Shown: in pieces, positions 42,000-64,000 of the stretch
Layout of the letters: every line of letters begins with the position of its first letter
How positions within the stretch are numbered: the first letter of the stretch is position 1
Virus record (IMG/VR): IMGVR_UViG_3300037245_001419
Location: 124,001-188,000 of that record
DNA length: 64,000 nucleotides
Direction: 5' to 3' (one strand)
Notes under the pieces: generated by a model
Databases searched by the model: none
The model's input: the letters and a program-made list of their open reading frames with translations, nothing else
Told to the model about the DNA's origin: nothing
Made by a program: the position numbers and the translations under genes

Positions 42000-42386
42000 C
42001 TATTTAGCCTTCCTTAATTCGTCACACTTTTCCCAACAAACACTTTCAGTCACATCTTTAATAACTTCAAATGCTTCATTCAATTTATCTAATGCGTCAT
42101 AGTATTTTTCATTAAACTTATCCATAGGGGCGTTTACTTTAGTTGATAGAATCGCTTCTGCTCTTCTGTCAGCAGTGGTATCCATTTGATTCCATAATTC
42201 GTCGAAAAAGAATTTAGGATTAACATCAATACCATCAATCTGCATGGTAATATCATATGACTTGTTGGATTTATTTTTGTCTAACCATTCACCGTTAAGT
42301 TCTTTAAGCATACCAACAGCTTGTAAAAAGAAGTGACCCATAAGCTCTTTATTGTTGTGCAATAGTTCTTCTCTATCAAATTTCAT
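42000..42386 (-). CDS. Hypothetical protein
   Basis: TAATG-coupled to the cca gene. Confidence 0.6.
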   Translation of the reverse strand: MKFDREELLHNNKELMGHFFLQAVGMLKELNGEWLDKNKSNKSYDITMQIDGIDVNPKFFFDELWNQMDTTADRRAEAILSTKVNAPMDKFNEKYYDALDKLNEAFEVIKDVTESVCWEKCDELRKAK

Positions 42387-43753
42387 TACGCCTCCAAACT
42401 AAAGTTTTTTATGTAGTCTCTGATTGCATCCATGTTGTCAAGGTCAACCATGTTGTCGTATATCCATTGCTTAGTACCTTTAATGATAACCCCAAGCTCT
42501 TTACAGGGTTTATCAATACCAGTAATTTCCATTACAAGCTTACCAGATACAAGTTTATCAACAGGCATATTGTTACGGTTAACAGGGTCGTTATACTTCT
42601 TAATAACAAAGTTAACATACTCCATCTTATTATCCCATGCCGATTGAGGAGATAGCTGTTCACCCCTGCACATTTCATCACAAAACGCAACCTTTACTAG
42701 TGCATCCCAGTTCACATTGTCAGTGAGAGTAATCAGCTTTGATACTCTCATTCCCTTCAGTCTATGGAATTTCATATGATTAACACAAGGGTAAACTAAA
42801 GTAGCCCTAGTCTTATTATCGATTTTAAGGCGGTCACAGATGGCGTTAACAATAGCCTCCCCTGCACCCTCATGGCAGTGATAAGTGTTCTTACCGTCCT
42901 TTACAACGTGCGTAAGAGCCTTTCCTACATCGTGTAATAGTATAGCCATGTTGATAACAGGATTTTCTTCTTTATTAACAGCTAAAGCACTCATAGTATG
43001 CAACCATGCGTTTGCACCTTCTGGATGTGAACTTAAATCATGGGGAAATTGATCTAATATGTCAACTTCTGGTAAGATATACTTCAGTAGGTTAGAAGTT
43101 TTCAATAACTCTAATGCATATGCAAAGCGTTCGCCAGTCTGTTCAGCCATTTTAAACAGCTCTTTTGCGATACGTTCTTGAGCTACTTTAGTTATGTTGT
43201 GGGCGAGTTCTTGAATGGCTTCCATTGTATCATTTTCGATTACAAAATCCATTCTACTTGCAAATCGAATAGCTCTTAACATTCTTAAATAGTCTTCAGC
43301 AAACCGCTCTTTAGGGTCTCCAACAGTTCTAATAATTTGATTTTTAATATCACATTTACCATTATGATAATCAATTACACCATAGTCTTTTCTTAAACCC
43401 ATAGAATTAATAGTAAAATCTCTTCTTTTAGTATCCTCTTCAAAGGTTACACCCAGTACTACATTGTCCGGTCTTCTACCATCAGAATATTCACCATCAG
43501 TTCTGAATTGAGCAACCTCAAAGTGATCGTCTTTATATTCTACAACAACAATACCAAAGACTTTGTTCTTACCAATATCATGAGTGGGGAATAACGATTC
43601 TATCTTATCCATGGGAACATTGGTTGCAATATCAATATCAGATGCAATTCTATTCATCAATGAATCTCTAACAGCACCACCAACAATATAAGCTTCCCCA
43701 TACTCTGATAGAAGTTTTATTATTTCCATTCCTTTAGATAATGCATTACTCAT
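42386..43753 (-). CDS. cca: CCA tRNA nucleotidyltransferase with HD domain
   Basis: YIVGGAVRD, DIDIAT, EVAQFR.D, EDTKRRDFTINSM, FAEDYLRMLRAIRFA, ERIAKEL, LLHDVGK. Confidence 0.93.
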   Translation of the reverse strand: MSNALSKGMEIIKLLSEYGEAYIVGGAVRDSLMNRIASDIDIATNVPMDKIESLFPTHDIGKNKVFGIVVVEYKDDHFEVAQFRTDGEYSDGRRPDNVVLGVTFEEDTKRRDFTINSMGLRKDYGVIDYHNGKCDIKNQIIRTVGDPKERFAEDYLRMLRAIRFASRMDFVIENDTMEAIQELAHNITKVAQERIAKELFKMAEQTGERFAYALELLKTSNLLKYILPEVDILDQFPHDLSSHPEGANAWLHTMSALAVNKEENPVINMAILLHDVGKALTHVVKDGKNTYHCHEGAGEAIVNAICDRLKIDNKTRATLVYPCVNHMKFHRLKGMRVSKLITLTDNVNWDALVKVAFCDEMCRGEQLSPQSAWDNKMEYVNFVIKKYNDPVNRNNMPVDKLVSGKLVMEITGIDKPCKELGVIIKGTKQWIYDNMVDLDNMDAIRDYIKNFSLEA

Positions 43754-44030: not shown

Positions 44031-44117
44031 TTTATTCCTTCTATATGATTACATTATTAAAGTTAGTTAATTAAATAAGTTATGTCAATATAAAACTGAA
44101 GTATTTGGCGAATTGAT

Positions 44118-44753
44118 CTAATAAGATTTTTTTATTTTTTTCAACTTATAGCGTCCTTCGATATTTTTTGGAAAATTTGCGAAGTAATTTAATAAAACTT
44201 TTTGACTGGAATTATTCCATATTTTCTTATCTATGCCTATTTTACCTTCCCAAGCCTTATATGAATTAGAAACTCTATTTACTGGATACATATCTAACCA
44301 AACATGTTTTGTATTGATAATACGTTCGTATGGAACATAAGAAGTTGTTTTTGTAGTTGTCTTATAATTTTTATTTTTATAGATTGATACATCAACTTCA
44401 CCTAATTTTGTCTGGTTGGGAGTATTCAATTTACCCTTAGTTGTACTGTAGTTAGTTACGGGTCTAACTCCTGTTTGTTTTGTAGTTGATTCGCTTGTAC
44501 TAACAAACATAAGATAATCAGCCTTTAAGGTTTTAGTATATACTTGAAACCCTAAACCATTCATTGCTTCGTATACATCATAAACCAAATTTCTGTCTTC
44601 AATACTACTATTATCCAAAGTAACAATTAGGATTTTAGAATCTTGGTTAATAGATATAGATTTGTCCGATCGGCCTAAAAAATATGCAGATTTTGTTTTA
44701 TGGTGAGTACAGTTCATTAATAACAATGTGAGTAGTAATAATAGAATTTTCAT
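44118..44753 (-). CDS. Lipoprotein (DUF4136-like fold possible)
   Basis: MKILLLLLTLLLMNC signal; ADYLMFV...WEGKI. Confidence 0.65.
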   Translation of the reverse strand: MKILLLLLTLLLMNCTHHKTKSAYFLGRSDKSISINQDSKILIVTLDNSSIEDRNLVYDVYEAMNGLGFQVYTKTLKADYLMFVSTSESTTKQTGVRPVTNYSTTKGKLNTPNQTKLGEVDVSIYKNKNYKTTTKTTSYVPYERIINTKHVWLDMYPVNRVSNSYKAWEGKIGIDKKIWNNSSQKVLLNYFANFPKNIEGRYKLKKIKKSY

Positions 44754-44756
44754 AAT

Positions 44757-45542
44757 TTAGTTCTCCTTGTTAAAAGAAATATGTTGGCACGGATATACTT
44801 TAGTTTCATCGGATGAGCTATAGTAGTATAAACTCCCTATGACAACAATGCTATCGAATTGTGATATTGCAGATATACTAGCATACAGATGATGATCACT
44901 AAGGTCGTAAGTACTATAATCTCTTGTTCTATCGAACTCCATTAGTTCACCGTCTAGATAGCGGATATAGTCGTCGTATATTGTTAACGGGTGCTTAAGG
45001 AGTAAATAAGATTCATCACCAATAAAAGCTTCAACTAAAGTATCTGGTAAAAACATCAGTTCCTTATTTTCTAGTTCACCTTTTACAGAGTGAAAATAAT
45101 ATTTCAAAACAGAATCACCAATAAGCATAGCAACATCATATTCTGTTGTAGAATCGTATTCGTCGCTGTACACTGTAAGGCTAAAGAATGTTGTATCACC
45201 AAACGTTGTATCAAATACCATATTCCCTAGACTAAGTGTTGTATCAATAGTGAATCCTTCAGATTTGTGATGTATGCTAGTGTAATTTGCATAGTCTGTT
45301 GAGTCATCTGCATTCCAATATCTAGGGTTATTATCTAGACCAAATTCGACAGGATAAAAGCCGATAGAATCGGATATTACCAGTTCCCAATTATGTTTTA
45401 CTGTACCGTCTACAATTTCTGATTCTGAACAGTAGCCATGTATAATAGGGTCTTGTTTAGGCTTAGATGAATATGTTATTTTGTCGGAGCACCCAACTAA
45501 AGTAATCGACAACACTAGTAGTGTCATAATACATAATTTCAT
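44757..45542 (-). CDS. Lipoprotein
   Basis: MKLCIMTLLVLSITLVGC lipobox. Confidence 0.7.
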   Translation of the reverse strand: MKLCIMTLLVLSITLVGCSDKITYSSKPKQDPIIHGYCSESEIVDGTVKHNWELVISDSIGFYPVEFGLDNNPRYWNADDSTDYANYTSIHHKSEGFTIDTTLSLGNMVFDTTFGDTTFFSLTVYSDEYDSTTEYDVAMLIGDSVLKYYFHSVKGELENKELMFLPDTLVEAFIGDESYLLLKHPLTIYDDYIRYLDGELMEFDRTRDYSTYDLSDHHLYASISAISQFDSIVVIGSLYYYSSSDETKVYPCQHISFNKEN

Positions 45543-45543
45543 A

Positions 45544-45849
45544 TTACCAAGAACTTTTTGCTAATATACGAGAAGAACTTTGATTGACAATTGATACTAC
45601 AATTGAAGAACCTACTCGTTTCACATAAACATCCTTAATCAAATTTGCCATATCTTCAAGTTCTTCTTTAGATGAATCGTATTGAGAACTTGATAGCTGA
45701 ACCCACAGAGAATTATTTCCAGCATAATAACACTCTATAACTGGCGAGTTTGATATTATATAATCTCCAAATTCTTTCTGTGTTGATGAAGGTGTGTATG
45801 CATACGTCATAGAGACTAAACATATGGTAATAAATATTATTTTTAACAT
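45544..45849 (-). CDS. Secreted/periplasmic protein
   Basis: Sec signal MLKIIFITICLVSMTYA. Confidence 0.6.
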   Translation of the reverse strand: MLKIIFITICLVSMTYAYTPSSTQKEFGDYIISNSPVIECYYAGNNSLWVQLSSSQYDSSKEELEDMANLIKDVYVKRVGSSIVVSIVNQSSSRILAKSSW

Positions 45850-45947
45850 GGTATATCCTTTTTGTTACTAAATTTAATTAATTATACATAAATTGTCTAT
45901 AAAAACTGAAGTACCCTCTCAAATACTTCAGTTTTGCTGTCTGCAAT

Positions 45948-46340: not shown

Positions 46341-46370
46341 AAAAAAATACCCCCTCCGTCGAGGGGGATT
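46341..46370 (-). terminator. Intrinsic terminator after the tRNA-like gene
   Basis: Minus strand: ATCCCCCTC-GACG-GAGGGGGTAT-TTTTTTT. Confidence 0.85.
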
Positions 46371-46372
46371 AT

Positions 46373-46494
46373 TCAATTAGATGGGATTCAAACCCATACA
46401 TTCCCACACTATAGACCTTTGCCAAAGATAACCCTTTGTAGTCAATAATGTGTTGGCTCTAAACCAGATACGCTATCAGTTGCGCCACTAATTA
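46373..46494 (-). tRNA. tRNA-like gene (anticodon UAG, Leu) interrupted by a ~49-nt hairpin insert; no encoded CCA
   Basis: Acceptor TAATTAG/CTAATTG + A73; D arm GCGC-AACTGATA-GCGT; anticodon arm TCTGG-TTTAGAG-CCA[insert]GG; T arm ATGGG-TTTGAAT-CCCAT. Confidence 0.7.
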
Positions 46495-47697: not shown

Positions 47698-48375
47698 TTA
47701 TTTTACAAATATGTTTTCATTGTGGGCTTTATAATAAGCTTTATAATAAGCTTTAATCTTATCCTTATTGGCCTCTCGATAAGCTTTAATCTTATCCTTA
47801 TTGGCCTCTCGATAAGCTTTATTATAAGCTTTAATCTTATCCTTATTGGCCTCTCGATAAGCTTTAATCTTATCCTTATTGTTCTCTCGACAATCTTTAT
47901 GATAAGCTTTAATCTTATCCTTATTGGCCTTTTGATAATCTTTCTGGAAAGCTTTAATCTTATCCTTATTGGCTTCTCGATAATCTTTCTGGGAAGCTTT
48001 AATCTTATCCTTATTGGCTTCTCGATAATCTTTCTGGGAAGCTTTAATCTTATCCTTATTTTTGGCATAATAATCTTTATTATATGCTTTATTATAATCT
48101 TTAATCTTATCTATTAATTTTGGATTGTAATTAAAAATTGCTTCTCCATGCGTCTGTACACTTGACTCTGTCTTCATAGTCCACTCATCACAAAATAAAT
48201 ATCCCTCTTCTTTGTAAGACTCTTTATTGTCATCAGCCCATTTTTTACAAACATCAAGGTCATCGTCACTAAAAATAGTTTCTGTACCACCACCATTTTC
48301 ATCATCATCGTCATACCATGAAATAGCTACTTCATACCATGAATAAGGATATACTACTTTTTCTTCATCTGCCAT
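47698..48375 (-). CDS. Protein with Lys-rich tandem repeats (NKDKIKA...YREA)
   Basis: About 10 imperfect repeats in the C-terminal half. Confidence 0.75.
   Translation of the reverse strand: MADEEKVVYPYSWYEVAISWYDDDDENGGGTETIFSDDDLDVCKKWADDNKESYKEEGYLFCDEWTMKTESSVQTHGEAIFNYNPKLIDKIKDYNKAYNKDYYAKNKDKIKASQKDYREANKDKIKASQKDYREANKDKIKAFQKDYQKANKDKIKAYHKDCRENNKDKIKAYREANKDKIKAYNKAYREANKDKIKAYREANKDKIKAYYKAYYKAHNENIFVK
47720..48110. repeat. Coding tandem repeat (27/39-bp units)
   Basis: AAGCTTTAATCTTATCCTTATT core repeated about 9 times. Confidence 0.9.
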
Positions 48376-49528: not shown

Positions 49529-49654
49529 GGTTAACTCCTTATTGTATCTATTATTAAAGATAGCTTATTAACTAAAGTATGTCAACGAAAAAAACTGAAG
49601 TATAAAAGAAAAATGGGTAAGATTCCTAATATACTTCAGTCTGCATTGGAGTGT

Positions 49655-51985: not shown

Positions 51986-52038
51986 GTTAATACTCCGTTA
52001 CTTCCTTATTATAAAGATAGTTAATTAACTAAGCCATG

Positions 52039-55229: not shown

Positions 55230-55336
55230 TTGGCACTCCTACCGTTATCTATTAATAAATATAGCTTATTAGCTAATCATTGTCAACAAAAAAGAGGTAC
55301 ACTAATTAATTTTAGTGTACCTCTTTTCGGTCGGAG

Positions 55337-55549
55337 TTAAAAATCCTCTATTTCGCTGTCTGTGCCTTCTAAAGCTTCTTGTATAATATGATATTCGTTT
55401 TCACTCATACCTTTATCGACACCCAAGGTTTTAAACACTTCAGCCATTGATAACATTTCATCAATACAAGAATTGCGTAAAAATTCTTTTGCGTGTCCAC
55501 ACTCTTCCAAAGACTCTTTAACAGATTCTACTAGTTCAGCTCTATTCAT
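55337..55549 (-). CDS. Early hypothetical protein
   Basis: Start MNRAELV, TAATG-coupled. Confidence 0.6.
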   Translation of the reverse strand: MNRAELVESVKESLEECGHAKEFLRNSCIDEMLSMAEVFKTLGVDKGMSENEYHIIQEALEGTDSEIEDF

Positions 55550-55659
55550 TAGTTTTTCCAATTTTTAAAAAGTTTATGTGCAATGAGTTGAATTGCAAAA
55601 CCTGATACAATACCTAGTATAGTAAAGGTTACATCTACATGATACCCAAACAATTCCAT
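55549..55659 (-). CDS. 36-aa single-TM peptide (not in the ORF track)
   Basis: MELFGYHVDVTFTILGIVSGFAIQLIAHKLFKNWKN; TAATG coupling at both ends. Confidence 0.6.
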   Translation of the reverse strand: MELFGYHVDVTFTILGIVSGFAIQLIAHKLFKNWKN

Positions 55660-56835
55660 TATTTTTTAAATTGGTAACAAATATTATTAGCTACTGTTAA
55701 ACCGCCACATTTAATAGGGTCTCTAACAAGTTTACAACAACCTTGATAAATAAGCTTGTCTAGTATCCGTTTGATACTTTTCTTCTTATTCTGTATGAGA
55801 GCACTCTCCATATAAGTAGGGACTTTAGGCTCTTTAAAGATAATACCAAATATTTGGCTGATTGAAAAGATAGTATCATTCGTAAAGATGATAGTTCTTA
55901 CTTTTCCGTACAATTCATCATTTGGTATACGATAACTCAAATTAACTTGACTATCCTTAAAGTATTGATCCTTGACATAATTAGGTTTTGTTTGTTCTTT
56001 ATGCATTGTTACTCCTTACCGTTTCTATTATTAAAGATAGTTAATTAGCTATCCTTTGTCAACAACTAAATGTTAAAATCTTAAAGAGTATTTGAAAATG
56101 TCAGCTATGCTGTTAAGCTTATTTGATTTTTTGGTTAGGTCTTCAATAGTTATCAATTGATTACATAGTTCAGATAAATCGGTTGGTGAAATATCGTCGG
56201 TTTCATATAAAGTAATATTCTCTTTATACAGATCTCTCAGTTTTGCAAATGATAAAAATATTGTGGCATGTTTCGCTGTTATATGCTTTATGATTTGCTT
56301 ATCACCCTGCATAATTTGAAAGAATGGGTATATTAAATCTACACCAAAATGAGACTCTTCTATTAAAACATGGACACCGTCAAAGTATTCTCCAATGATA
56401 GCATATTTGAAAGAAGGTGTTATATCGACTACTTCATTGCAGTAAACTATTGCGTAACACTTCTTAATTTCAAATGTTTTTTTCATAAATTATTCCTACA
56501 GTTTAACTATTATAAAGATAGATAGTTAATTAGTTATGTACTGTCAACAACTAAAGTAATATTTTAACAATGTAAAATACAATTTTACGTTTAAAGTCAA
56601 TTGGGTATAAATGGTTGATTGTAATTAACACCATGCTTTTATAGCTCTCTTTTATGGTAATGGTCGGTGCACAAACATGATGATCTTTTACAATATCGTT
56701 TCTAATGAGTGTTATACCTGCTTGAACGTCCGATAAATAAGAGCCTTCTTTAGTTTGTGCCTTAACCAGTTTAGGTGCTTTACGGTCTCTGTGAGCTGTT
56801 TTAATTGCCTGTATAATGTTCTTAATAATATCCAT
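55659..56835 (-). CDS. Three early hypothetical ORFs (55659-56006, 56073-56486, 56551-56835)
   Basis: Each preceded by its own promoter or hairpin element. Confidence 0.55.
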
Positions 56836-56909
56836 GTTTACCTATAAAGAAACTGAAGTATACTATAAACGGAATAACATATAGTATACTTCAGTCGGTC
56901 GGGTCGGAG

Positions 56910-57548
56910 TTAATATTGTGATTTGCCTGTAACAATGTTTCTTATCGTTTCATTTTGGGTTAGATCAGGTTCTGCTGTATCAATTAAACCCCACCATGAT
57001 CCAAACTTAGTCTCTAAAATTATTTCGTTGTGTTCCTTGAGTGCCTTGAGTATGTGGTCACTAACTAAATACCATCGCTTAACCGTGTAACTTTCTGAAT
57101 CTAGACCCTTTAGAGTGGTTAGTTTGTCTTCTATCGTGGATTCAATATCCTCTTTTTCATCTAAACAAGTTCTTACATTTGAAACGTCTTCAAGTAATTG
57201 TGTTAACTTGTCATCATTGGTCATAGTAGGTTCAATACAGTCCTCAATAGCTTCTAAATCGCTCTTCAGTTGATATACTTCAGTTGATACATTGTCTAAA
57301 TCCTGTACGTACTGTTCAATCAAATCTGTAACGTCATCATTGCTGAGTTGTTCACCTTCCCACATATAATACTCAGTATTGATAGCGTCATTTTCTAAAT
57401 GTGGATTACAATTAATTAAATATTCAACTAAAGTACTTTGATCTTTGTAAACCTCTTCTCTGATAAGTTCATAAATCCTGTAAACAATGTTACTCTCTTT
57501 AAATGATGCTTTAACTACTGCATTGCTTTCGTTTGTATGTGACATAAT
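56910..57548 (-). CDS. Acidic coiled-coil early protein with FGSWWG motif
   Basis: WYLVSD.I...L..H.E.ILE..FGSWWG. Confidence 0.65.
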   Translation of the reverse strand: MMSHTNESNAVVKASFKESNIVYRIYELIREEVYKDQSTLVEYLINCNPHLENDAINTEYYMWEGEQLSNDDVTDLIEQYVQDLDNVSTEVYQLKSDLEAIEDCIEPTMTNDDKLTQLLEDVSNVRTCLDEKEDIESTIEDKLTTLKGLDSESYTVKRWYLVSDHILKALKEHNEIILETKFGSWWGLIDTAEPDLTQNETIRNIVTGKSQY

Positions 57549-57653
57549 TTTCTCCAACTCTTAACCTGTATTAAATATAGCTAATTAGTTAACCCCTGTC
57601 AACAAAAAAAGAGATACACCAAAATTAATTAGTGTACCTCTTTTCGGTCGGAG

Positions 57654-57965
57654 TTATAGTCTTTCGTAATTTTCAATCTCACCATTTGAGACATAAAATT
57701 TAATTCTGTCAATCTCTTTTTTAGTTTCTTCAATACCAATACCCATAACTAAATTATCAGAGTAGTTTTTGAGGATTGCTACAATATACTTTAGTTTTTT
57801 GTTTAGCTTGTCGGTATCTCTTAACAATATTTCATCTTGTTCCAGTACATTAAATTGTTTACCTTCTGAAATAGTTGTATTAATTGTTTCTTGATTTATA
57901 GCTATACTACATTGCAATTCACAAATTAAATCTATTGCTGTTCTATTCGCTTTAATGCTACTCAT
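57654..57965 (-). CDS. Early cassette ORF
   Basis: AGGAGTGCCAAAC-ATG start; TAACTCCGACCG end. Confidence 0.65.
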   Translation of the reverse strand: MSSIKANRTAIDLICELQCSIAINQETINTTISEGKQFNVLEQDEILLRDTDKLNKKLKYIVAILKNYSDNLVMGIGIEETKKEIDRIKFYVSNGEIENYERL

Positions 57966-58027
57966 GTTTGGCACTCCTACCGTTATCTATTATTAAATAT
58001 AGCTTATTAACTAAAGTATGTCAACCC

Positions 58028-59028
58028 TTATTGTGATTTGTGACATACTAAACAAATATTATGACCTTCAATATAGATAAAACGTCTAGGGGGACACGTA
58101 CACATTTTTCTAGCTTCCGCTTCCATCTCTCTAGCTTGTTTAATTAGCTTTTGTGCAGTAACAAACATCCCTTTAATTTTATTAGCTTTATCGTCTGTCA
58201 TTTCACGTTTAAGCCATACTTCAGTTTGATTCTCTATTATGTCAATAACAGATAAACGTATACCCATACTATCATCATCAACCGTTACACTGTCAACATC
58301 TTGTCTATCAACATCTAACTCTAAGTTAAGATCATTATATACTTCTCTTAAGTGCATAGCTAAATCATGTTTGGCTATATCGGGGTAGTTTAACGGTAAT
58401 ACTATAGTTAAATTCATTCGTTGCTCCTACCGTTTAATCTGCAAAATTTGCTGTTATGGTATTACATTCAATATCGATTGTGATTTCAGTAAAGCCTAAA
58501 CCTTTAACATAGCCTTGATAAGTAGGTTTTTCTTTAAACTTTTCTACCGCTTCTTTACAAGTTTTACGTTGTTCAGTTGAGCACAAATATTCACCGTTCT
58601 TAAAGATGTTTATTTTTCTAGCCATTATTTACTCCAATTCTTAACCTGTATTAAAGATAGTTAATTAACTAAGCACTGTCAACAATAAAAGGTTTAAATT
58701 CACAAATATATTCTTTTTTAACCTCTTCAACTAAAGTCAAAAGCTCATTACTAAAGTAAGTACTATCATTTTGAGCCATTGAGTCAAGTGCCTTGACAAA
58801 TGTCAAAATAATTTGATCTTTGGTTGTGATACTTTTTCCAACTTCTAAAATACTTGTCTTAGTAGCAAGCAATAAATCTAAAACAGTGCTCTCCAGATTC
58901 TTACTGATAATATCATTAATATTAATATCGTCATACTTTTCAGAAAATCTTAGTATACAAGATATACCACTAATAGAATTGCTAATATGTGAACCACAAT
59001 TAGAGTCACTGATTGAACCAATATTCAT
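58028..59028 (-). CDS. Three early ORFs (58028-58417, 58434-58625, 58669-59028)
   Basis: Promoter/SD elements; 58028 ends in a MCTCP...CLVC zinc domain. Confidence 0.6.
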
Positions 59029-59132
59029 AATATACTCCCTGTATTAAATATAGTTAATTAACTAAGCAATGTCAACAAAAACTGAAGTATACCAAAAATA
59101 AATTAGTATACTTCAGTTTAGGCGGTTTGGAG

Positions 59133-59840
59133 TTATTCTTCTATTACTAACTGCATCACTTTAGCAAGTTTCAAAGATTGAGATACTGATAGCTTAGTAT
59201 TGTAAACCTCAATCTTGATAGTGTCATCTTTAACGTGAATACATAAAGAATTATTTTCATCTGAGTAATAATAATTTTTGTGTTCAATGTATCTACCATT
59301 GGGAAAAGCTATTGTAAGAGCCTCAACCGTTTCGGTCTTGAAATTTTTGATTTTAAGAGCTTCCTGCTCCTGTTTTTCTTTTACGTCCAGTTCCCATTGA
59401 TTTTCTCTATCTAACCATGTACACAAATCTGTAAGCTTTGTTTTAAGGGTAACAAGATTTTTAAGAAACAAATTGATGGTTTTAGGTCGTTCTTCTATTT
59501 CGTCACTGTATTGTTTTGAGTTGTTATTGAATTTAGCAACCCGATACAATGTAAACCTGGGGAATTGTTGACACGCACAAAAGAACTTATACTTACCATC
59601 TAAGACAAGTTCGTTTGAGTTGTCATTGTATTTTGGATTGTTTAACGTGCTTTCAATGGTAGTGAAAAATTGACTAAAGAATTGTCTGTATACTTCATTT
59701 TGTTCTAGTTCGCATAAATTATCCCAAACTCTCATTGAAGGATTTTTCACTAAATACTCAGCAATATCCGAGCGGTTTGGATATTTTTTAGTCATCATGT
59801 GAATTTTATTGACAGAAAGAATAGTTTCAAAAGATCTCAT
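59133..59840 (-). CDS. Early cassette ORF
   Basis: Conserved RBS unit; TAACTCCAAACCG end. Confidence 0.65.
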   Translation of the reverse strand: MRSFETILSVNKIHMMTKKYPNRSDIAEYLVKNPSMRVWDNLCELEQNEVYRQFFSQFFTTIESTLNNPKYNDNSNELVLDGKYKFFCACQQFPRFTLYRVAKFNNNSKQYSDEIEERPKTINLFLKNLVTLKTKLTDLCTWLDRENQWELDVKEKQEQEALKIKNFKTETVEALTIAFPNGRYIEHKNYYYSDENNSLCIHVKDDTIKIEVYNTKLSVSQSLKLAKVMQLVIEE

Positions 59841-59918
59841 GTTTGGCACTCCTACCGTTTATCTATTAATAAATATAGCTTATTAATTAATACCTGTCAA
59901 CAACTAAATCACTTTAGT

Positions 59919-60125
59919 TTATAATATTTCTTGTCTTATTATTTGATGCAATGTATTGTAGTCTCCTTTTCTATACCTTGCATCCGTATACAAAACCCCT
60001 TTGACTTTTCTTTTTGCCTCATGGTCATTATCAGCCATAAATGGTATTATGGTGTTTTTACTGACATTACCACCCATTACAACATCAAATTCTACAATAT
60101 TGTATGTTAATTCATAGTGATTCAT
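59919..60125 (-). CDS. Early cassette ORF
   Basis: AGGAGCGCCAAAC-ATG. Confidence 0.6.
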   Translation of the reverse strand: MNHYELTYNIVEFDVVMGGNVSKNTIIPFMADNDHEAKRKVKGVLYTDARYRKGDYNTLHQIIRQEIL

Positions 60126-60235
60126 GTTTGGCGCTCCTACCGTTATCTATTATTAAATATAGTTAATTAACTAACCCTTGTCAACAAAAAAAGAGATACA
60201 CCAAAATTAATTAGTGCACCTCTTTTCGGTCGGAG

Positions 60236-60523
60236 TTAAAAGTGTAAAAATAGTTTTGTTGTTTGCTCAAATGTACTAACCAATTGATCATTATAGATAT
60301 TTTCAAATCTATCAACTATCGGAGCGTTTTTGCCATGAATTTTAATGAAGTCGATATCATATAAATCCATGCCATTTAAAGTTATTTTACAGTAGTTTGA
60401 GTGACGACTACCCTTGAATCTAAACATTAGGGAGTTATCATCTTTTAAGAATTGTTTCACCCCCAAGAAGTGACTAATTCTTGATCCACCCAATTGCTCT
60501 AAAATTGTTTCTGCTACTTCCAT
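60236..60523 (-). CDS. Conserved phage early protein (VAETILEQLGG family)
   Basis: VAETILEQLGG...ITLNGMDLYD.DF...IY.DQL...FE..T.L. Confidence 0.7.
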   Translation of the reverse strand: MEVAETILEQLGGSRISHFLGVKQFLKDDNSLMFRFKGSRHSNYCKITLNGMDLYDIDFIKIHGKNAPIVDRFENIYNDQLVSTFEQTTKLFLHF

Positions 60524-60576
60524 TTGGTACTCCTACCGTTAACTTATATTAAATATAGTTAATTAACTAAAGTATG

Positions 60577-61627
60577 TCAAGCGTTTTTTAATGCAAAGTA
60601 AATTAAATCTTCAATAGTTTTGCAGTCCTCTATTAATGAGTAGATAGTGTGATTAATATCACTACTACTTATACCTTGACCACTACCCTCAAAATCGCTT
60701 TCAAGTTGTTTTGATGCAATGTCACGTATTGCTGTTTGTATTATCTTATTTGATGATCTATAGAGCTTAAAAACACGTTTCCAATTTTCGGCGTGTGTTA
60801 ATTCTTTAACAGGTCTTACAATATCACAAGTGATGCATTCACTCATTACTTCTTTAGGAAATGACTCTGTATTAAACATTTGTCCAACAAAATACTTTTT
60901 TATTTCAAAATCTGAACTATCACCATTAACTGAAGTTTTCCAACTGTGACCATTTTCACACGTAAGTGTTGCACTAATAAGATTTGACATATTTGGTACT
61001 CCTACCGTTTATCTATTAATAAATATAGCTTATTAATTAACCGTTGTCAATGGATTATACAAATTAATAATTAATTTTATAACCTTTTCTTAAAATTATA
61101 TCTCTAACCAATTCCCTGTCTATTGTATCACCATCAAAATCTAGGTCGGGTAGTTCTTCAGCTCTAATTTCAATAGCTTCTCTAATATCACTATCTTTTA
61201 AACCGTCAATTGGATAAATCCCCTCTATAGAGTAAAAGCTATTAAAGTATTCTATAAACTTCTTTATACAATGTTCTTTTTTATCAGCCTCTGTCATACC
61301 ATTCAAAATCTCTAAAGTCATAATTGTAACCCGTTAGTTAACTATATAATAAATATAGCTTATTAATTAACCTTTGTCAATAAGTTTCTGTATTTCGTCG
61401 GTAATAATAATATTATTTTGTGACCTGTTTTTTTCCCAATGTGCACTGTCTGGCAATACACTATTTTTACCGTCATTTGTCCATATAGTATATTTTGACT
61501 TAAAAGGTTTTTCCTTTAAAACAATATTACCTTGTAATGGGAATGTAACCTCATTGTTACAACTATTAAATTTATTGTACCCATGGATAATAACTCTTTT
61601 GCCACCAACTGTTTTAGTCTCAATCAT
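60577..61627 (-). CDS. Three early ORFs (60577-60990, 61064-61321, 61367-61627)
   Basis: 60577 has a CENGHSW.T.VNG...C zinc ribbon; promoters at 61026 and 61356. Confidence 0.6.
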
Positions 61628-61700
61628 AATAAGCCTTTAAAAAAACTGAAGTACACTATACCAATGTCAAAAAATATAATGTACTTCAGTCGGGTCGGAG

Positions 61701-61964
61701 TTAAATTACTTTAGTTAGTGTATCGGTAAGGTACTGATTAAAATCCTTTACACTTATATCCATTAATGAGCCGTCAACTTCAACCCCGTCAACATAACAA
61801 CGTTGCACCCAAGTTCTATAACACTTCATAACAACATTTTTACCGTTCAACTCAAATTTTGGATAATACCAACTATCTTTGTCCTGTTTTCTCACGGTGT
61901 TAATGTGCTTTACCGCATCAATTACTGTTTTAATCGGGGTCAATGTAATTGCTTCTTTAATCAT
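61701..61964 (-). CDS. Early cassette ORF
   Basis: Conserved RBS unit; TAACTCCGACC end. Confidence 0.65.
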   Translation of the reverse strand: MIKEAITLTPIKTVIDAVKHINTVRKQDKDSWYYPKFELNGKNVVMKCYRTWVQRCYVDGVEVDGSLMDISVKDFNQYLTDTLTKVI

Positions 61965-62077
61965 GTTTGGCACTCCTACCGTTATCTATTAATAAATATA
62001 GCTAATTAACTAAGTACTGTCAACAAAAAAACTGAAGTATACCAAATAAATTCAATATACTTCAGTTTGGGTCGGAG

Positions 62078-62491
62078 TTAATTTCTAACTTCAAATCCAT
62101 TTGTTGATGGATTATATTCCATACGCTTAATATTTTTATGTTTAAGGTAGTTTAATAGCATTCCAAACTGTGTAGTCGCTTTATATTTAGCAGTGCAAGG
62201 GTGTTGCATTGCTTTGATCTTAAAGATCTCAAACCCTCTTATAAGCTTCTGAAAATCCACTATCTTATCATCACTATAATCAAATAATACTTTAGGGGCG
62301 TAAGGCATAAAATAGTCATCACTTGATTGAAACGTAAATTTGCATATTTCTACTAAACAGTGACGATTTTTATCAAATGATCTAATTAAAATAGAGTGCT
62401 CTCTAATATCCTTAAGAAATCGATTACTATGTGTACTACTTCCATAACTGAAGTAAATTTTCCCTAATTTCAATTGAACATAATCTAACAT
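62078..62491 (-). CDS. Early cassette ORF
   Basis: Conserved RBS unit; TAACTCCGACC end. Confidence 0.65.
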   Translation of the reverse strand: MLDYVQLKLGKIYFSYGSSTHSNRFLKDIREHSILIRSFDKNRHCLVEICKFTFQSSDDYFMPYAPKVLFDYSDDKIVDFQKLIRGFEIFKIKAMQHPCTAKYKATTQFGMLLNYLKHKNIKRMEYNPSTNGFEVRN

Positions 62492-62562
62492 TTTTTGGCA
62501 CTCCTACCGTTTATCTATTAATAAATATAGCTAATTAACTAAAGTATGTCAACCCCTAAACG

Positions 62563-63141: not shown

Positions 63142-63999
63142 TTAAGCTACTATTTTACATCTGGTTATTTTGGTCTGCTTTTGTTCTTTGTAGGTGCTGT
63201 GCTCTTTTATAGTCCCTGTAATAGTACCTTTTGTGCCATTGTCAAAAAACTTATTTGTAGACCATGAAAAGATATAATTTTCTTTAGATTGAATAGTGTA
63301 AATAAAAGTAGTACCATATTTTGTATCAAAAGAACTTACCCTTATTATTTCACATTCAAAAGATATTTTGTCTTTAACCGCTCCAAAAAATTCATTGACG
63401 GTTACTTTAGTTTCTTTTTTCTTGATTAACTCAGTACCGTTTAATAGGTAATCAAAAACAGAATAAACAACTAAACCCTTTTTAGTACTCATAGTAGTGA
63501 GTGATAAGAATATATTACGGGTAAATTCTGAATTGTCGGTTTTGATTTTATTTGTCCAGTATTCATAAAACGAATCAATATTAAACAGCTTTATAACCGC
63601 TTCAAAATCATCTATCTTTTGAACTACAATAGCGTTTACTATATCTATTGTAGTCATACCGTTATTATCGGGTTTTGCTTTTGAGTAATACCGCTTATCG
63701 TTATAGATGACATAAAAAGCTTTGTTTAAAATTTCATCAATACATTCAACGTGTTTAAAATATTCTACCTCTTCTAAATTCTGAATACTTACAAACAGCT
63801 TTGTATAGTTATCTAACTGCATTGCAATATTAACACCAAAATACTCTTTTGCACAACTACTGGCAATTTGAATAATCTCTTTTGTTTCGGTATCTTGAAA
63901 CAAGTGTACTTTTTTACGGTCTCGAATAGTATTACAGTGATCACAGTAAAATTTAACATCAAAGTAGCTACTCAAATCAAGATCATTGTCACTTCTAAA
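63142..63999 (-). CDS. Conserved large-phage protein with zinc-binding and C-terminal OB-like region (5' truncated)
   Basis: CDHC...R.R...IASSC; FFG.V.DK...TKYGTT...WST...TGTIKEH..Y...KQT..TRCK. Frame is open to the window edge. Confidence 0.65.
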   Translation of the reverse strand, partial: FRSDNDLDLSSYFDVKFYCDHCNTIRDRKKVHLFQDTETKEIIQIASSCAKEYFGVNIAMQLDNYTKLFVSIQNLEEVEYFKHVECIDEILNKAFYVIYNDKRYYSKAKPDNNGMTTIDIVNAIVVQKIDDFEAVIKLFNIDSFYEYWTNKIKTDNSEFTRNIFLSLTTMSTKKGLVVYSVFDYLLNGTELIKKKETKVTVNEFFGAVKDKISFECEIIRVSSFDTKYGTTFIYTIQSKENYIFSWSTNKFFDNGTKGTITGTIKEHSTYKEQKQTKITRCKIVA

Positions 64000-64000
64000 A

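What the first reader, a model, noticed from the sequence alone, without database searches (positions are those of the whole stretch)
55328..62509. Single-gene early cassettes bracketed by an inverted repeat that pairs the Shine-Dalgarno with the post-stop sequence
Seen: in at least five monocistronic units the mRNA starts with CGGUAGGAGU (the SD) and the stop codon runs into ACUCCGACC(G). These pair 8-9/10 bp with one A.G mismatch. Forward-strand arm pairs: 57645-54/57973-82, 60227-36/60529-38, 61692-701/61972-81, 62069-78/62500-09, and 59123-33/59848-57 (one extra A). A three-gene unit has 55328-37/56011-21. A conserved hairpin and the next promoter follow immediately. The enclosed ORFs are unrelated, so the arms are conserved independently of cargo. 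Established: 3'-end/5'-end fold-back that occludes the RBS is how hok (fbi element) and several other type I toxin mRNAs delay translation. Inference: either (a) a fold-back translational timer, so host-takeover proteins are made only from nascent transcripts until the 3' end is transcribed, or (b) DNA-level terminal inverted repeats that define a mobile one-gene cassette. I know of no description of this in a phage early region.
Basis: partly seen in the sequence, partly recalled or inferred. Interest (0 to 1): 0.88.

Follow-up and report, generated by a model that had tools for sequence, protein, structure and literature searches.

The report
Phage early-gene cassettes with anti-SD terminators
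A large uncultured phage packs its early genes as swappable one-gene units, a known arrangement, but here each terminator also carries a short sequence that can pair with the ribosome-binding site, which may make these messages limit their own translation.

Summary
All genes lie on the minus strand. Seven intrinsic terminators between 55.3 and 62.1 kb are each preceded by (U)AACUCC(G/A)ACC. This sequence is complementary to the standard early 5'UTR/SD, CGGUAGGAGU, or to a second SD type, GUUGGAG.

The cassettes are not bounded by terminal inverted repeats. They resemble the PeSL promoter/terminator modules of T4-type phages. A related lineage (B) carries the same modules with different cargo, and the breakpoints fall inside promoters, UTRs and terminators.

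The anti-SD core ACUCC sits just 5' of the terminator hairpin in lineages A, B and C (22 copies, 20 distinct); lineage D has one ACUCC copy and one CUUCC variant. This argues for selection.

The evidence for an obligate 5'-3' fold-back is mixed:
- No compensatory changes are seen in the arms, although the hairpin stems do show them.
- Two of seven lineage-C units have a non-complementary SD.
- Many genes with the same SD have no 3' arm.
- The helix energy is only in the top 0.5-2.4% of sense-strand 19-mers.

The most likely function is a built-in anti-SD that damps translation or mRNA stability of early messages, mainly in cis. This is unproven. I rate it a new variant of known kinds.

The parts
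62524..62552 (-). Early promoter of cassette 1 (TTGACA, 17-nt spacer, TATATT; the spacer holds a near-palindrome)
62500..62509 (-). 5' arm / SD of cassette 1 (CGGUAGGAGU)
62078..62491 (-). Cargo ORF of cassette 1, 137 aa, no family match
62025..62078 (-). 3' arm ACUCCGACCC (62069-78), family-2 terminator hairpin (62032-65) and U-run
61972..62023 (-). Promoter (61995-62023) and 5' arm/SD (61972-81) of cassette 2
61639..61964 (-). Cargo ORF of 87 aa (61701-61964), 3' arm ACUCCGACCC (61692-701) and hairpin (61646-89). The next gene follows with no promoter.
60529..60580 (-). Promoter (60552-80) and 5' arm/SD (60529-38) of cassette 3
60186..60523 (-). Cargo ORF of 95 aa (60236-60523, phrog_9437), 3' arm ACUCCGACCG (60227-36) and family-1 hairpin (60193-222)
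59848..59900 (-). Promoter (59872-900) and 5' arm/SD (59848-57) of cassette 4
59077..59840 (-). Cargo ORF of 235 aa (59133-59840), variant 3' arm ACUCCAAACCG (59123-33) and family-2 hairpin (59082-116)
57973..58024 (-). Promoter (57996-58024) and 5' arm/SD (57973-82) of cassette 5
57604..57965 (-). Cargo ORF of 103 aa (57654-57965), 3' arm ACUCCGACCG (57645-54) and family-1 hairpin (57611-40)
57552..57602 (-). Promoter (57574-602) and second SD type GUUGGAG (57552-58) of cassette 6
56845..57545 (-). Cargo ORF of 211 aa (56910-57545), 3' arm ACUCCGACCCGACCG (56896-910) and family-2 hairpin (56853-94). The next gene follows with no promoter.
56011..56062 (-). Promoter (56034-62) and 5' arm with an extra A, CGGUAAGGAGU (56011-21), of the three-gene unit
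55288..56006 (-). Three ORFs (115, 36 and 70 aa), 3' arm ACUCCGACCG (55328-37) and family-1 hairpin (55294-323)
55235..55244 (-). SD arm copy heading an operon with no anti-SD terminator within the next ~5 kb. Further copies without a 3' arm of their own are at 58423-32, 60133-42 and 60998-61007.
49595..49652 (-). Outlying diverged copy: ACUCCAAUGC (49643-52) and a family-2 hairpin (49595-639). Its unit's SD, UGGAGU, gives only 6 bp.

Best explanation
The region is a hyperplastic early-gene block of a roughly 249-kb uncultured phage. It is built from PeSL-like expression cassettes. Each cassette has three parts:
- a near-consensus sigma-70 promoter with a near-palindrome in its spacer, followed by a standard 5'UTR/SD
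- an unrelated small ORF
- a terminator module made of an anti-SD element (ACUCC plus a short C-rich flank), an A-tract, a hairpin and a U-run.

Shown from sequence comparison: cassettes are gained, lost and replaced by recombination within the shared regulatory repeats.

Inferred: the anti-SD element base-pairs with the SD region of early mRNAs. In a terminated monocistronic transcript the only partner is its own SD, 300-750 nt upstream. The finished message would then close on itself, giving lower ribosome loading and probably faster decay, while the nascent message with a free SD is translated. In read-through transcripts the same element can pair with the next cassette's SD instead. The net effect would be a short, self-limited burst of early proteins.
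For: Cassette and module architecture:
- There are 21 copies of TTGACA-17-TAT(A/C/G)TT on the minus strand at 47.6-62.6 kb.
- Seven terminators at 55.3-62.1 kb all carry the motif. Two unrelated hairpin families share it.
- Hairpin stems show compensatory changes at positions 3, 9 and 11.

Recombination between lineage A (the window) and lineage B (L016/L008/L017, 80-95% nt identity in shared parts):
- Cargo differs while the modules are shared.
- The indel of the 129-aa gene has its breakpoint inside AACGGTAGGAG.
- The 211-aa and 177-aa alleles swap together with their UTR type.
- One promoter 5' half drives different genes in A and B.

Anti-SD pairing:
- Predicted pairing is P = 0.94-1.00 in 7/7 full-length mRNAs.
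- Cis duplexes are -11.8 to -14.4 kcal/mol in 7/8 units of A, 5/5 of B and 5/7 of C. Among all early genes only 27-29% reach that level.
- In lineage C, a second-type SD, GUUGGAGUAA, faces UUACUCCGAC, which I read as 10 contiguous pairs including one G.U (sequence).
- ACUCC is retained next to terminators in lineages A-C (anchor protein 55% identical between A and C), with variable spacing to the stop codon (0-5 nt) and to the stem (7-13 nt).
- 9 of the 20 CUCC on the sense strand of 36-68 kb lie at terminators.

Precedent: the icaR 3'UTR pairs with its own SD (PMC3868564). In B. subtilis an anti-SD 8-mer 467 nt downstream pairs with the SD in vivo and cuts mRNA half-life from 11.2 to 1.7 min (PMC12697547).
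Against: - There are no compensatory substitutions in the arms. The A.G mismatch is never repaired. Lineage C's extra U in the 5' arm is unmatched in at least three of its seven arms. The G-to-AA variant of the 3' arm occurs opposite an unchanged 5' arm.
- Two lineage-C units (genes L138:14465-14980 and L138:15063-15578) have the arm but a non-complementary SD, at -3.6 and -5.8 kcal/mol.
- The same SD/UTR heads at least six lineage-C units that end in a different terminator class with no anti-SD.
- Three family-2 terminators lack the element.
- Global folding is unspecific: with the arm scrambled or removed, the SD is still 'paired' at 0.1-0.9.
- The duplex energy is only in the top 0.5-2.4% of sense-strand 19-mers.
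- The copies are paralogous and probably homogenised by recombination, so the counts overstate independence.
- Transcript ends are predicted, not mapped, and the host is unknown.
Confidence: 0.45

Rival explanations
1. The motif has a function unrelated to the SD, or none beyond extending the homology of the terminator module. Examples would be a protein-binding or termination-assisting element. On this reading the complementarity to the SD is incidental.
For: The arm tracks the terminator hairpin, not the SD type. Beyond the 5-nt core, the flank matches the UTR at only 3 of 4 positions, which I estimate at p of about 0.05. Energies of this size are not rare. No covariation is seen, whereas the hairpin stems do covary. 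Another ubiquitous motif, AACTRAAGTA, also abuts stop codons and terminators, so conserved boundary motifs are common in this phage.
Against: The most invariant part is exactly the complement of the SD core GGAGU. Its spacing to the hairpin varies from 7 to 13 nt, which fits a single-stranded seed better than a composite protein site. CUCC is otherwise rare on the sense strand. Anti-SD 8-mers at long range are active in vivo in B. subtilis (PMC12697547).
Confidence: 0.28
2. Read-through insulation. The arm pairs with the SD of the next cassette, about 95 nt downstream across the terminator and promoter. The downstream gene would then be translated only from its own promoter's transcripts. This resembles T4 early transcripts, in which an upstream sequence sequesters the SD (from memory, not checked here).
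For: The two arms are the outer ends of one ~130-nt intergenic module. The downstream SD is complementary in about 9 of 18 junctions. The strongest pair of all, -19.7 kcal/mol at L138:16063, is with the downstream UTR. Folding of read-through constructs gives P = 0.07-0.96 for this pairing in full-length constructs, and 0.48-0.98 locally.
Against: Only 3 of 7 junctions in the window have a complementary downstream SD, against 6-7 of 7 upstream. Four junctions are followed by weak, non-complementary SDs. It also requires terminator read-through, whose extent is unknown.
Confidence: 0.12
3. Trans-acting anti-SD RNA. Decay of early mRNAs leaves stable 3' fragments (seed ACUCCGACC, hairpin and U-tail), like 3'UTR-derived sRNAs. 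These would titrate the shared SD of all early messages and help shut off early translation.
For: The anatomy is a single-stranded C-rich seed directly 5' of a terminator hairpin. The arm is uncoupled from the cis SD in some units. Many early genes share the target SD without having an arm.
Against: There are no expression data, the host and its RNA chaperones are unknown, and cis pairing is kinetically favoured.
Confidence: 0.1
4. DNA-level terminal inverted repeats of a transposon-like one-gene cassette.
For: A 10-bp imperfect inverted repeat brackets each ORF, and cassette content differs between relatives.
Against: Left breakpoints lie in promoters or UTRs, not at the 5' arm. Promoter and terminator lie outside the inverted repeat yet move with, or serve as, the exchange sites. 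I saw no target-site duplication. None of the ten cassette ORFs tested has a transposase or integrase domain. All cassettes have the same orientation.
Confidence: 0.03

Closest known systems
PeSL (promoter-early stem-loop) cassettes of T4-type phages (Arbiol et al. 2010, PMC2839356; Comeau et al. 2014, PMC4122927)
   Same: Repeated composite modules combine a strong sigma-70-type early promoter, a stem-loop terminator and the SD/ATG. They flank small orphan ORFs in a hyperplastic region. Related phages differ by insertion, deletion or replacement of ORFs, with crossovers inside the modules.
   Different: Here the stem-loops are A-tract/U-run hairpins built partly from a genome-wide 10-mer. The promoter spacer holds a near-palindrome. 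The module carries an anti-SD element abutting the stop codon, which the passages of the PeSL papers I searched do not mention. The phage is not shown to be T4-type. Mini-circles could not be tested.
icaR mRNA 5'UTR-3'UTR pairing in Staphylococcus aureus (PMC3868564)
   Same: A pyrimidine-rich anti-SD motif in the 3' untranslated part of an mRNA is complementary to that mRNA's own SD. Pairing blocks initiation and promotes decay.
   Different: icaR is a single cellular gene with a long 3'UTR and an RNase III substrate. Here the motif is a modular part of many phage terminators, lies 0-5 nt after the stop codon, forms a 9-10-bp interrupted helix, and is untested experimentally.
Long-range anti-SD-like sequences in bacterial mRNAs (Gill et al. 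2025 preprint, PMC12697547)
   Same: Short anti-SD-like sequences hundreds of nt from the RBS pair with the SD, lower translation and shorten half-life.
   Different: In that work such sequences are depleted from genes because they are harmful. Here one is conserved at a fixed place, which suggests it is put to use.
hok/sok fbi (fold-back inhibition) element
   Same: The 3' end pairs with the 5' end, so the full-length mRNA is translationally inert.
   Different: No antisense RNA, no toxin-type ORF and no conserved cargo. In hok, activation needs 3' processing. Nothing here suggests that, and this is not a member of that family.

Membership tests
PeSL cassettes | Repeated near-consensus sigma-70-type early promoter | tested here: met
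   21 copies of TTGACA-17-TAT(A/C/G)TT on the gene strand at 47.6-62.6 kb. This is a sequence match only; promoter activity was not assayed.
PeSL cassettes | Adjacent stem-loop acting as terminator or attenuator | tested here: met
   Hairpins of -13.8 to -19.4 kcal/mol followed by U-runs. Compensatory stem changes across 17 copies. Termination itself was not assayed.
PeSL cassettes | SD and start codon at the 3' end of the module | tested here: met
   The UTR ends in CGGTAGGAGT, 6-9 nt, then ATG.
PeSL cassettes | Association with small orphan ORFs in a variable region | tested here: met
   Ten cassette ORFs: no Pfam match above the curated cutoff, one PHROG of unknown function. No similarity among them.
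PeSL cassettes | Indels or replacements between close relatives with crossovers inside the modules | tested here: met
   Window against L016/L008/L017.
PeSL cassettes | Excised mini-circles | not testable with these tools
   This needs sequencing reads or PCR.
PeSL cassettes | Host phage is T4-type | tested here: inconclusive
   None of the 20 large window ORFs scanned against PHROGs matched a structural or other T4-core family. The neighbouring 368-aa protein has 25-29% identical relatives in T4-like Aeromonas and Vibrio phages.
5'UTR-3'UTR SD sequestration (icaR type) | 3' motif complementary to the SD of the same mRNA | tested here: met
   Met in 17 of 20 units across lineages A, B and C.
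5'UTR-3'UTR SD sequestration (icaR type) | The two regions actually pair | tested here: inconclusive
   Predicted P = 0.94-1.00, but the controls are unspecific and no covariation is seen.
5'UTR-3'UTR SD sequestration (icaR type) | Pairing lowers translation or stability | not testable with these tools
   This needs reporters, toeprinting or structure probing.
hok/sok type I toxin-antitoxin (fbi) | Conserved small toxin ORF with an antisense RNA | tested here: not met
   The cargo ORFs are 70-235 aa, mutually unrelated and have no toxin family match. In my reading of the plus-strand rows of the promoter scan, none was stronger than the shuffle background.
TIR-bounded mobile element | Presence/absence breakpoints at the outer ends of both inverted repeats | tested here: not met
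   The right boundary coincides with the 3' arm, but left boundaries lie in promoter spacers or within the UTR.
TIR-bounded mobile element | Target-site duplication and a transposase or recombinase | tested here: not met
   The arm flanks differ (…ATAA|CGGT and ACCG|AAAA). None of the ten cassette ORFs tested has such a domain.

The most novel reading that the evidence does not exclude
A phage lineage has built an anti-SD 'off' element into the terminator of its exchangeable early-gene cassettes. Any ORF dropped into a cassette would then automatically get a strong but self-extinguishing expression pulse. The accumulated 3' fragments might additionally act in trans as anti-SD RNAs that help shut off all early translation.
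Probability: 0.25. Interest if true: 0.8.

Novelty: new variant of a known kind. Interest (0 to 1): 0.55.

Why it matters
If the anti-SD element works, it would be a modular, cargo-independent way for a phage to time and cap early (host-takeover) protein synthesis after transcription, without a dedicated regulator. It would also be a natural case in which long-range SD sequestration is selected for, rather than selected against as in cellular genes. It would add a translational layer to the PeSL concept of mobile regulatory cassettes. Finally, it would give a compact, portable 'pulse' expression part that can be tested in laboratory strains.

Tried and rejected
Searches that found no useful relatives:
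- Megablast and tblastn against INPHARED phages found no near relative. Only distant protein hits to Gram-negative phages came up.
- IMG/VR pattern scans returned only the source contig (IMGVR_UViG_3300037245_001419) and a near-identical 33-kb contig.
- L015 and L010 were chance matches.
- One gapped pattern was too loose and returned only noise.
- The single metagenome scan found no relative.
- Relatives came only through protein look-ups.

Other tests:
- Rfam found nothing at the modules.
- Thermodynamic folding turned out not to discriminate.
- Cross-lineage duplex energies showed no own-lineage preference.

Readings considered and rejected:
- The 3' arm as a remnant of an inverted UTR copy: similarity stops at the 10 nt.
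- The 3' arm as an SD for a plus-strand gene: there is no start codon at the right spacing.
- An integron attC-like site: there is no integrase and all exchange points are in promoters or terminators.
- The stop-codon overlap as proof of a ribosome-coupled switch: lineage C has 2-5 nt spacers, and another motif also overlaps stop codons.

Full report
**What the window is.** The window belongs to IMG/VR contig IMGVR_UViG_3300037245_001419, which is 211,777 bp long. An identical stretch lies on a 248,963-bp JGI contig (L011). No INPHARED phage is similar at the DNA level, and the 1050-aa ORF has no protein match there. GC content is about 31-35%.

From about 36 to 68 kb all genes are on the minus strand. 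They are preceded by about 35 copies of a strongly conserved promoter: TTGACA, a spacer containing TTAGTTAATTAACTA, then TAT(A/C)TT.

**Checking the observation.** The coordinates are exact. On the mRNA strand, seven intrinsic terminators between 55.3 and 62.1 kb are each preceded by (T)AACTCCGACC(G/C), or once by ACTCCAAACCG. The stop codon overlaps or touches the motif. An A-tract, a hairpin and a U-run follow 1-5 nt later.

Two unrelated hairpin families share the motif: GAGGTACAC… and CTGAAGTA….

The 5' partner, CGGTAGGAGT, is the SD region of a standard 5'UTR. It occurs ten times between 55.2 and 62.5 kb. Both motifs far exceed their shuffle counts.

Of the seven terminated units, five start with the exact 5' arm, one has an extra A, and one uses a second SD type, GUUGGAG. 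That second type pairs with CUCCGAC through a G.U where the first type has the A.G mismatch. The cargo proteins are unrelated to one another.

**Relatives.** Protein look-ups recovered three further lineages.
- Lineage B (L016, L008, L017) is 80-95% identical in shared DNA.
- Lineage C (L138, L141) has an anchor protein 55% identical to the window's.
- Lineage D (L140) has an anchor protein 54% identical.

**B against the window: recombination at the modules.** B carries the same promoter, UTR and terminator modules but different cargo and order.
- B lacks eight of the window's cassette genes, and the window lacks three of B's (112, 125 and 186 aa); B's 177-aa gene is a distant allele of the window's 211-aa gene (next point).
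- The 129-aa gene plus its downstream promoter is absent from B, with the junction inside AACGGTAGGAG.
- The 211-aa gene is replaced by a 26%-identical 177-aa allele that brings a different UTR type. Homology resumes exactly at TAACTCCGACC.
- One promoter 5' half drives different genes in the two lineages.

This is recombination between repeated regulatory modules. It was described for T4-type phages as PeSLs (PMC2839356, PMC4122927). It is not transposition bounded by the inverted repeat. The left breakpoints are not at the SD arm, and I saw no target duplication. None of the ten cassette ORFs tested has a recombinase or transposase domain.

**Is the SD/post-stop complementarity functional? 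Evidence for.**
1. ViennaRNA pairs GGAG with the 3' CUCC at P = 0.94-1.00 in all seven predicted full-length mRNAs. The SD is mostly free in the first 60-120 nt.
2. The core ACUCC is retained immediately 5' of terminator hairpins in lineages A (8 copies), B (5), C (7) and D (1, plus one CUUCC variant). Meanwhile the distance to the stop codon (0-5 nt), the distance to the stem (7-13 nt), the 3' half of the motif and the hairpin loops all vary. Orthologous terminators of A and C keep ACTCCGACC exactly.
3. In lineage C, one unit with the second SD type has GUUGGAGUAA facing UUACUCCGAC, which I read as ten contiguous pairs including one G.U (sequence).
4. Cis duplexes of -11.8 kcal/mol or better occur in 17 of 20 units. 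Only 27-29% of all early genes reach that level.
5. CUCC is rare on the sense strand, and 9 of its 20 copies in 32 kb are at terminators.
6. Long-range anti-SD pairing is experimentally established elsewhere, for icaR (PMC3868564) and in B. subtilis reporters (PMC12697547).

**Evidence against.**
1. With the arm scrambled, mutated or removed, the SD is still predicted to be paired at 0.1-0.9. Global folding therefore has little specificity here.
2. Duplex energies of this size are only in the top 0.5-2.4% of sense-strand 19-mers.
3. The arms show no compensatory change, whereas the hairpin stems do at three positions.
4. Lineage C's UTR has an extra U (CGGUUAGGAGU) that at least three of its seven arms do not match.
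5. Two lineage-C units carry the arm behind genes with a non-complementary SD.
6. At least six lineage-C units with the same SD end in a different terminator class that has no anti-SD.
7. Three CTGAAGTA hairpins lack the element.
8. In the window, 3 of 7 arms are also complementary to the next cassette's SD. Read-through constructs fold that way at P = 0.07-0.96. In one lineage-C junction the downstream pairing is the strongest of all, at -19.7 kcal/mol.
9. The copies are paralogous, so the association statistics are inflated. Against the local baseline within the 55-62.6 kb block (10 of 19 genes complementary), the 7-of-7 result gives p of about 0.01.

**Conclusion.** I have high confidence in the PeSL-like cassette organisation and in recombinational cargo turnover. 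I have moderate confidence that the conserved element is an anti-SD that pairs with early SDs. For terminated monocistronic mRNAs this means a 5'-3' closure that would curb translation and stability once the message is complete. Whether it acts mainly in cis, on read-through RNA or in trans cannot be decided from sequence alone. It works like icaR and like long-range anti-SD sequestration. It is not a hok/fbi family member and it is not a TIR element.

Noticed in passing
whole window, both strands (for example 1655, 12581, 36287, 49570, 61707, 62537): The 10-mer AACT(A/G)AAGTA occurs 68 times against 0.87 expected. It forms the stems of the CTGAAGTA terminators. Its complement lies in many promoter spacers (TACTTTAGTT). 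It often overlaps stop codons and precedes the GC-hairpin terminators. It also forms arrays in long non-coding stretches of the relatives (L138:567-1591 and 2012-2841; L140:580-1084). It is probably a site for a DNA- or RNA-binding factor.
   Followed up: partly
promoter spacers, for example 62528-62542, 60556-60570, 58658-58672, 52018-52032; L140 promoters: The early-promoter spacers hold a near-perfect palindrome, TTAGTTAATTAACTA, with 46 hits at up to 2 mismatches against 0.94 expected. Lineage D has the same promoter layout but a different palindrome, ATAGGAAC-N4-GTTCCTAT. This looks like an operator that co-varies with a lineage-specific repressor of early transcription.
   Followed up: partly
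window 46373-46494 (-): Rfam tRNA model match at 32.3 bits (gathering score 29). The acceptor, D and T arms are intact, but a 53-nt insertion replaces the anticodon region. ARAGORN calls no tRNA. It lies just upstream of a strong GC hairpin at 46350-46367. It could be an interrupted tRNA or a tRNA-like element.
   Followed up: partly
window 61367-61627 (-) and 56551-56835 (-): Two genes sit directly behind anti-SD terminators with no promoter and weak SDs (AAAGGC, UAGGUAAAC). The same arrangement, including the sequence TTTAAAGGCTTATTATG, is conserved in lineage C (L138:16491-16564). These genes appear to depend on terminator read-through.
   Followed up: no
window 66-70 kb extension (L003) and L138:4.3-12 kb: A second terminator class (GC-rich hairpin preceded by AACTAAAGTA) serves early units with the same or other SDs and carries no anti-SD.
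   Followed up: partly
window 42386-43753 (-): A 455-aa protein with a poly(A) polymerase / CCA-adding enzyme head domain and its RNA-binding domain.
   Followed up: no
window 44103-45858: A ~1.75-kb segment is absent from the otherwise 98.6-99.8% identical 33-kb contig IMGVR_UViG_3300043171_000184. This is another indel in the early region.
   Followed up: no
window 47698-48375 (-): The ORF contains internal repeats of roughly 190 nt at about 77% identity (self-hits at 47736-48103).
   Followed up: no
window 63142-64000 (-), continuing to 64248 in L003/L011: The 368-aa ORF next to the cassette block (phrog_2319) is the best anchor for finding relatives. It is 54-55% identical in lineages C and D, and 25-29% identical in T4-like Aeromonas and Vibrio phages.
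   Followed up: yes
L140:19569-20513; L138:10272-10562; L140:1256-1540: Lineage D carries a tyrosine-integrase-domain gene near its early block. Lineages C and D encode SpoVG-domain proteins.
   Followed up: no
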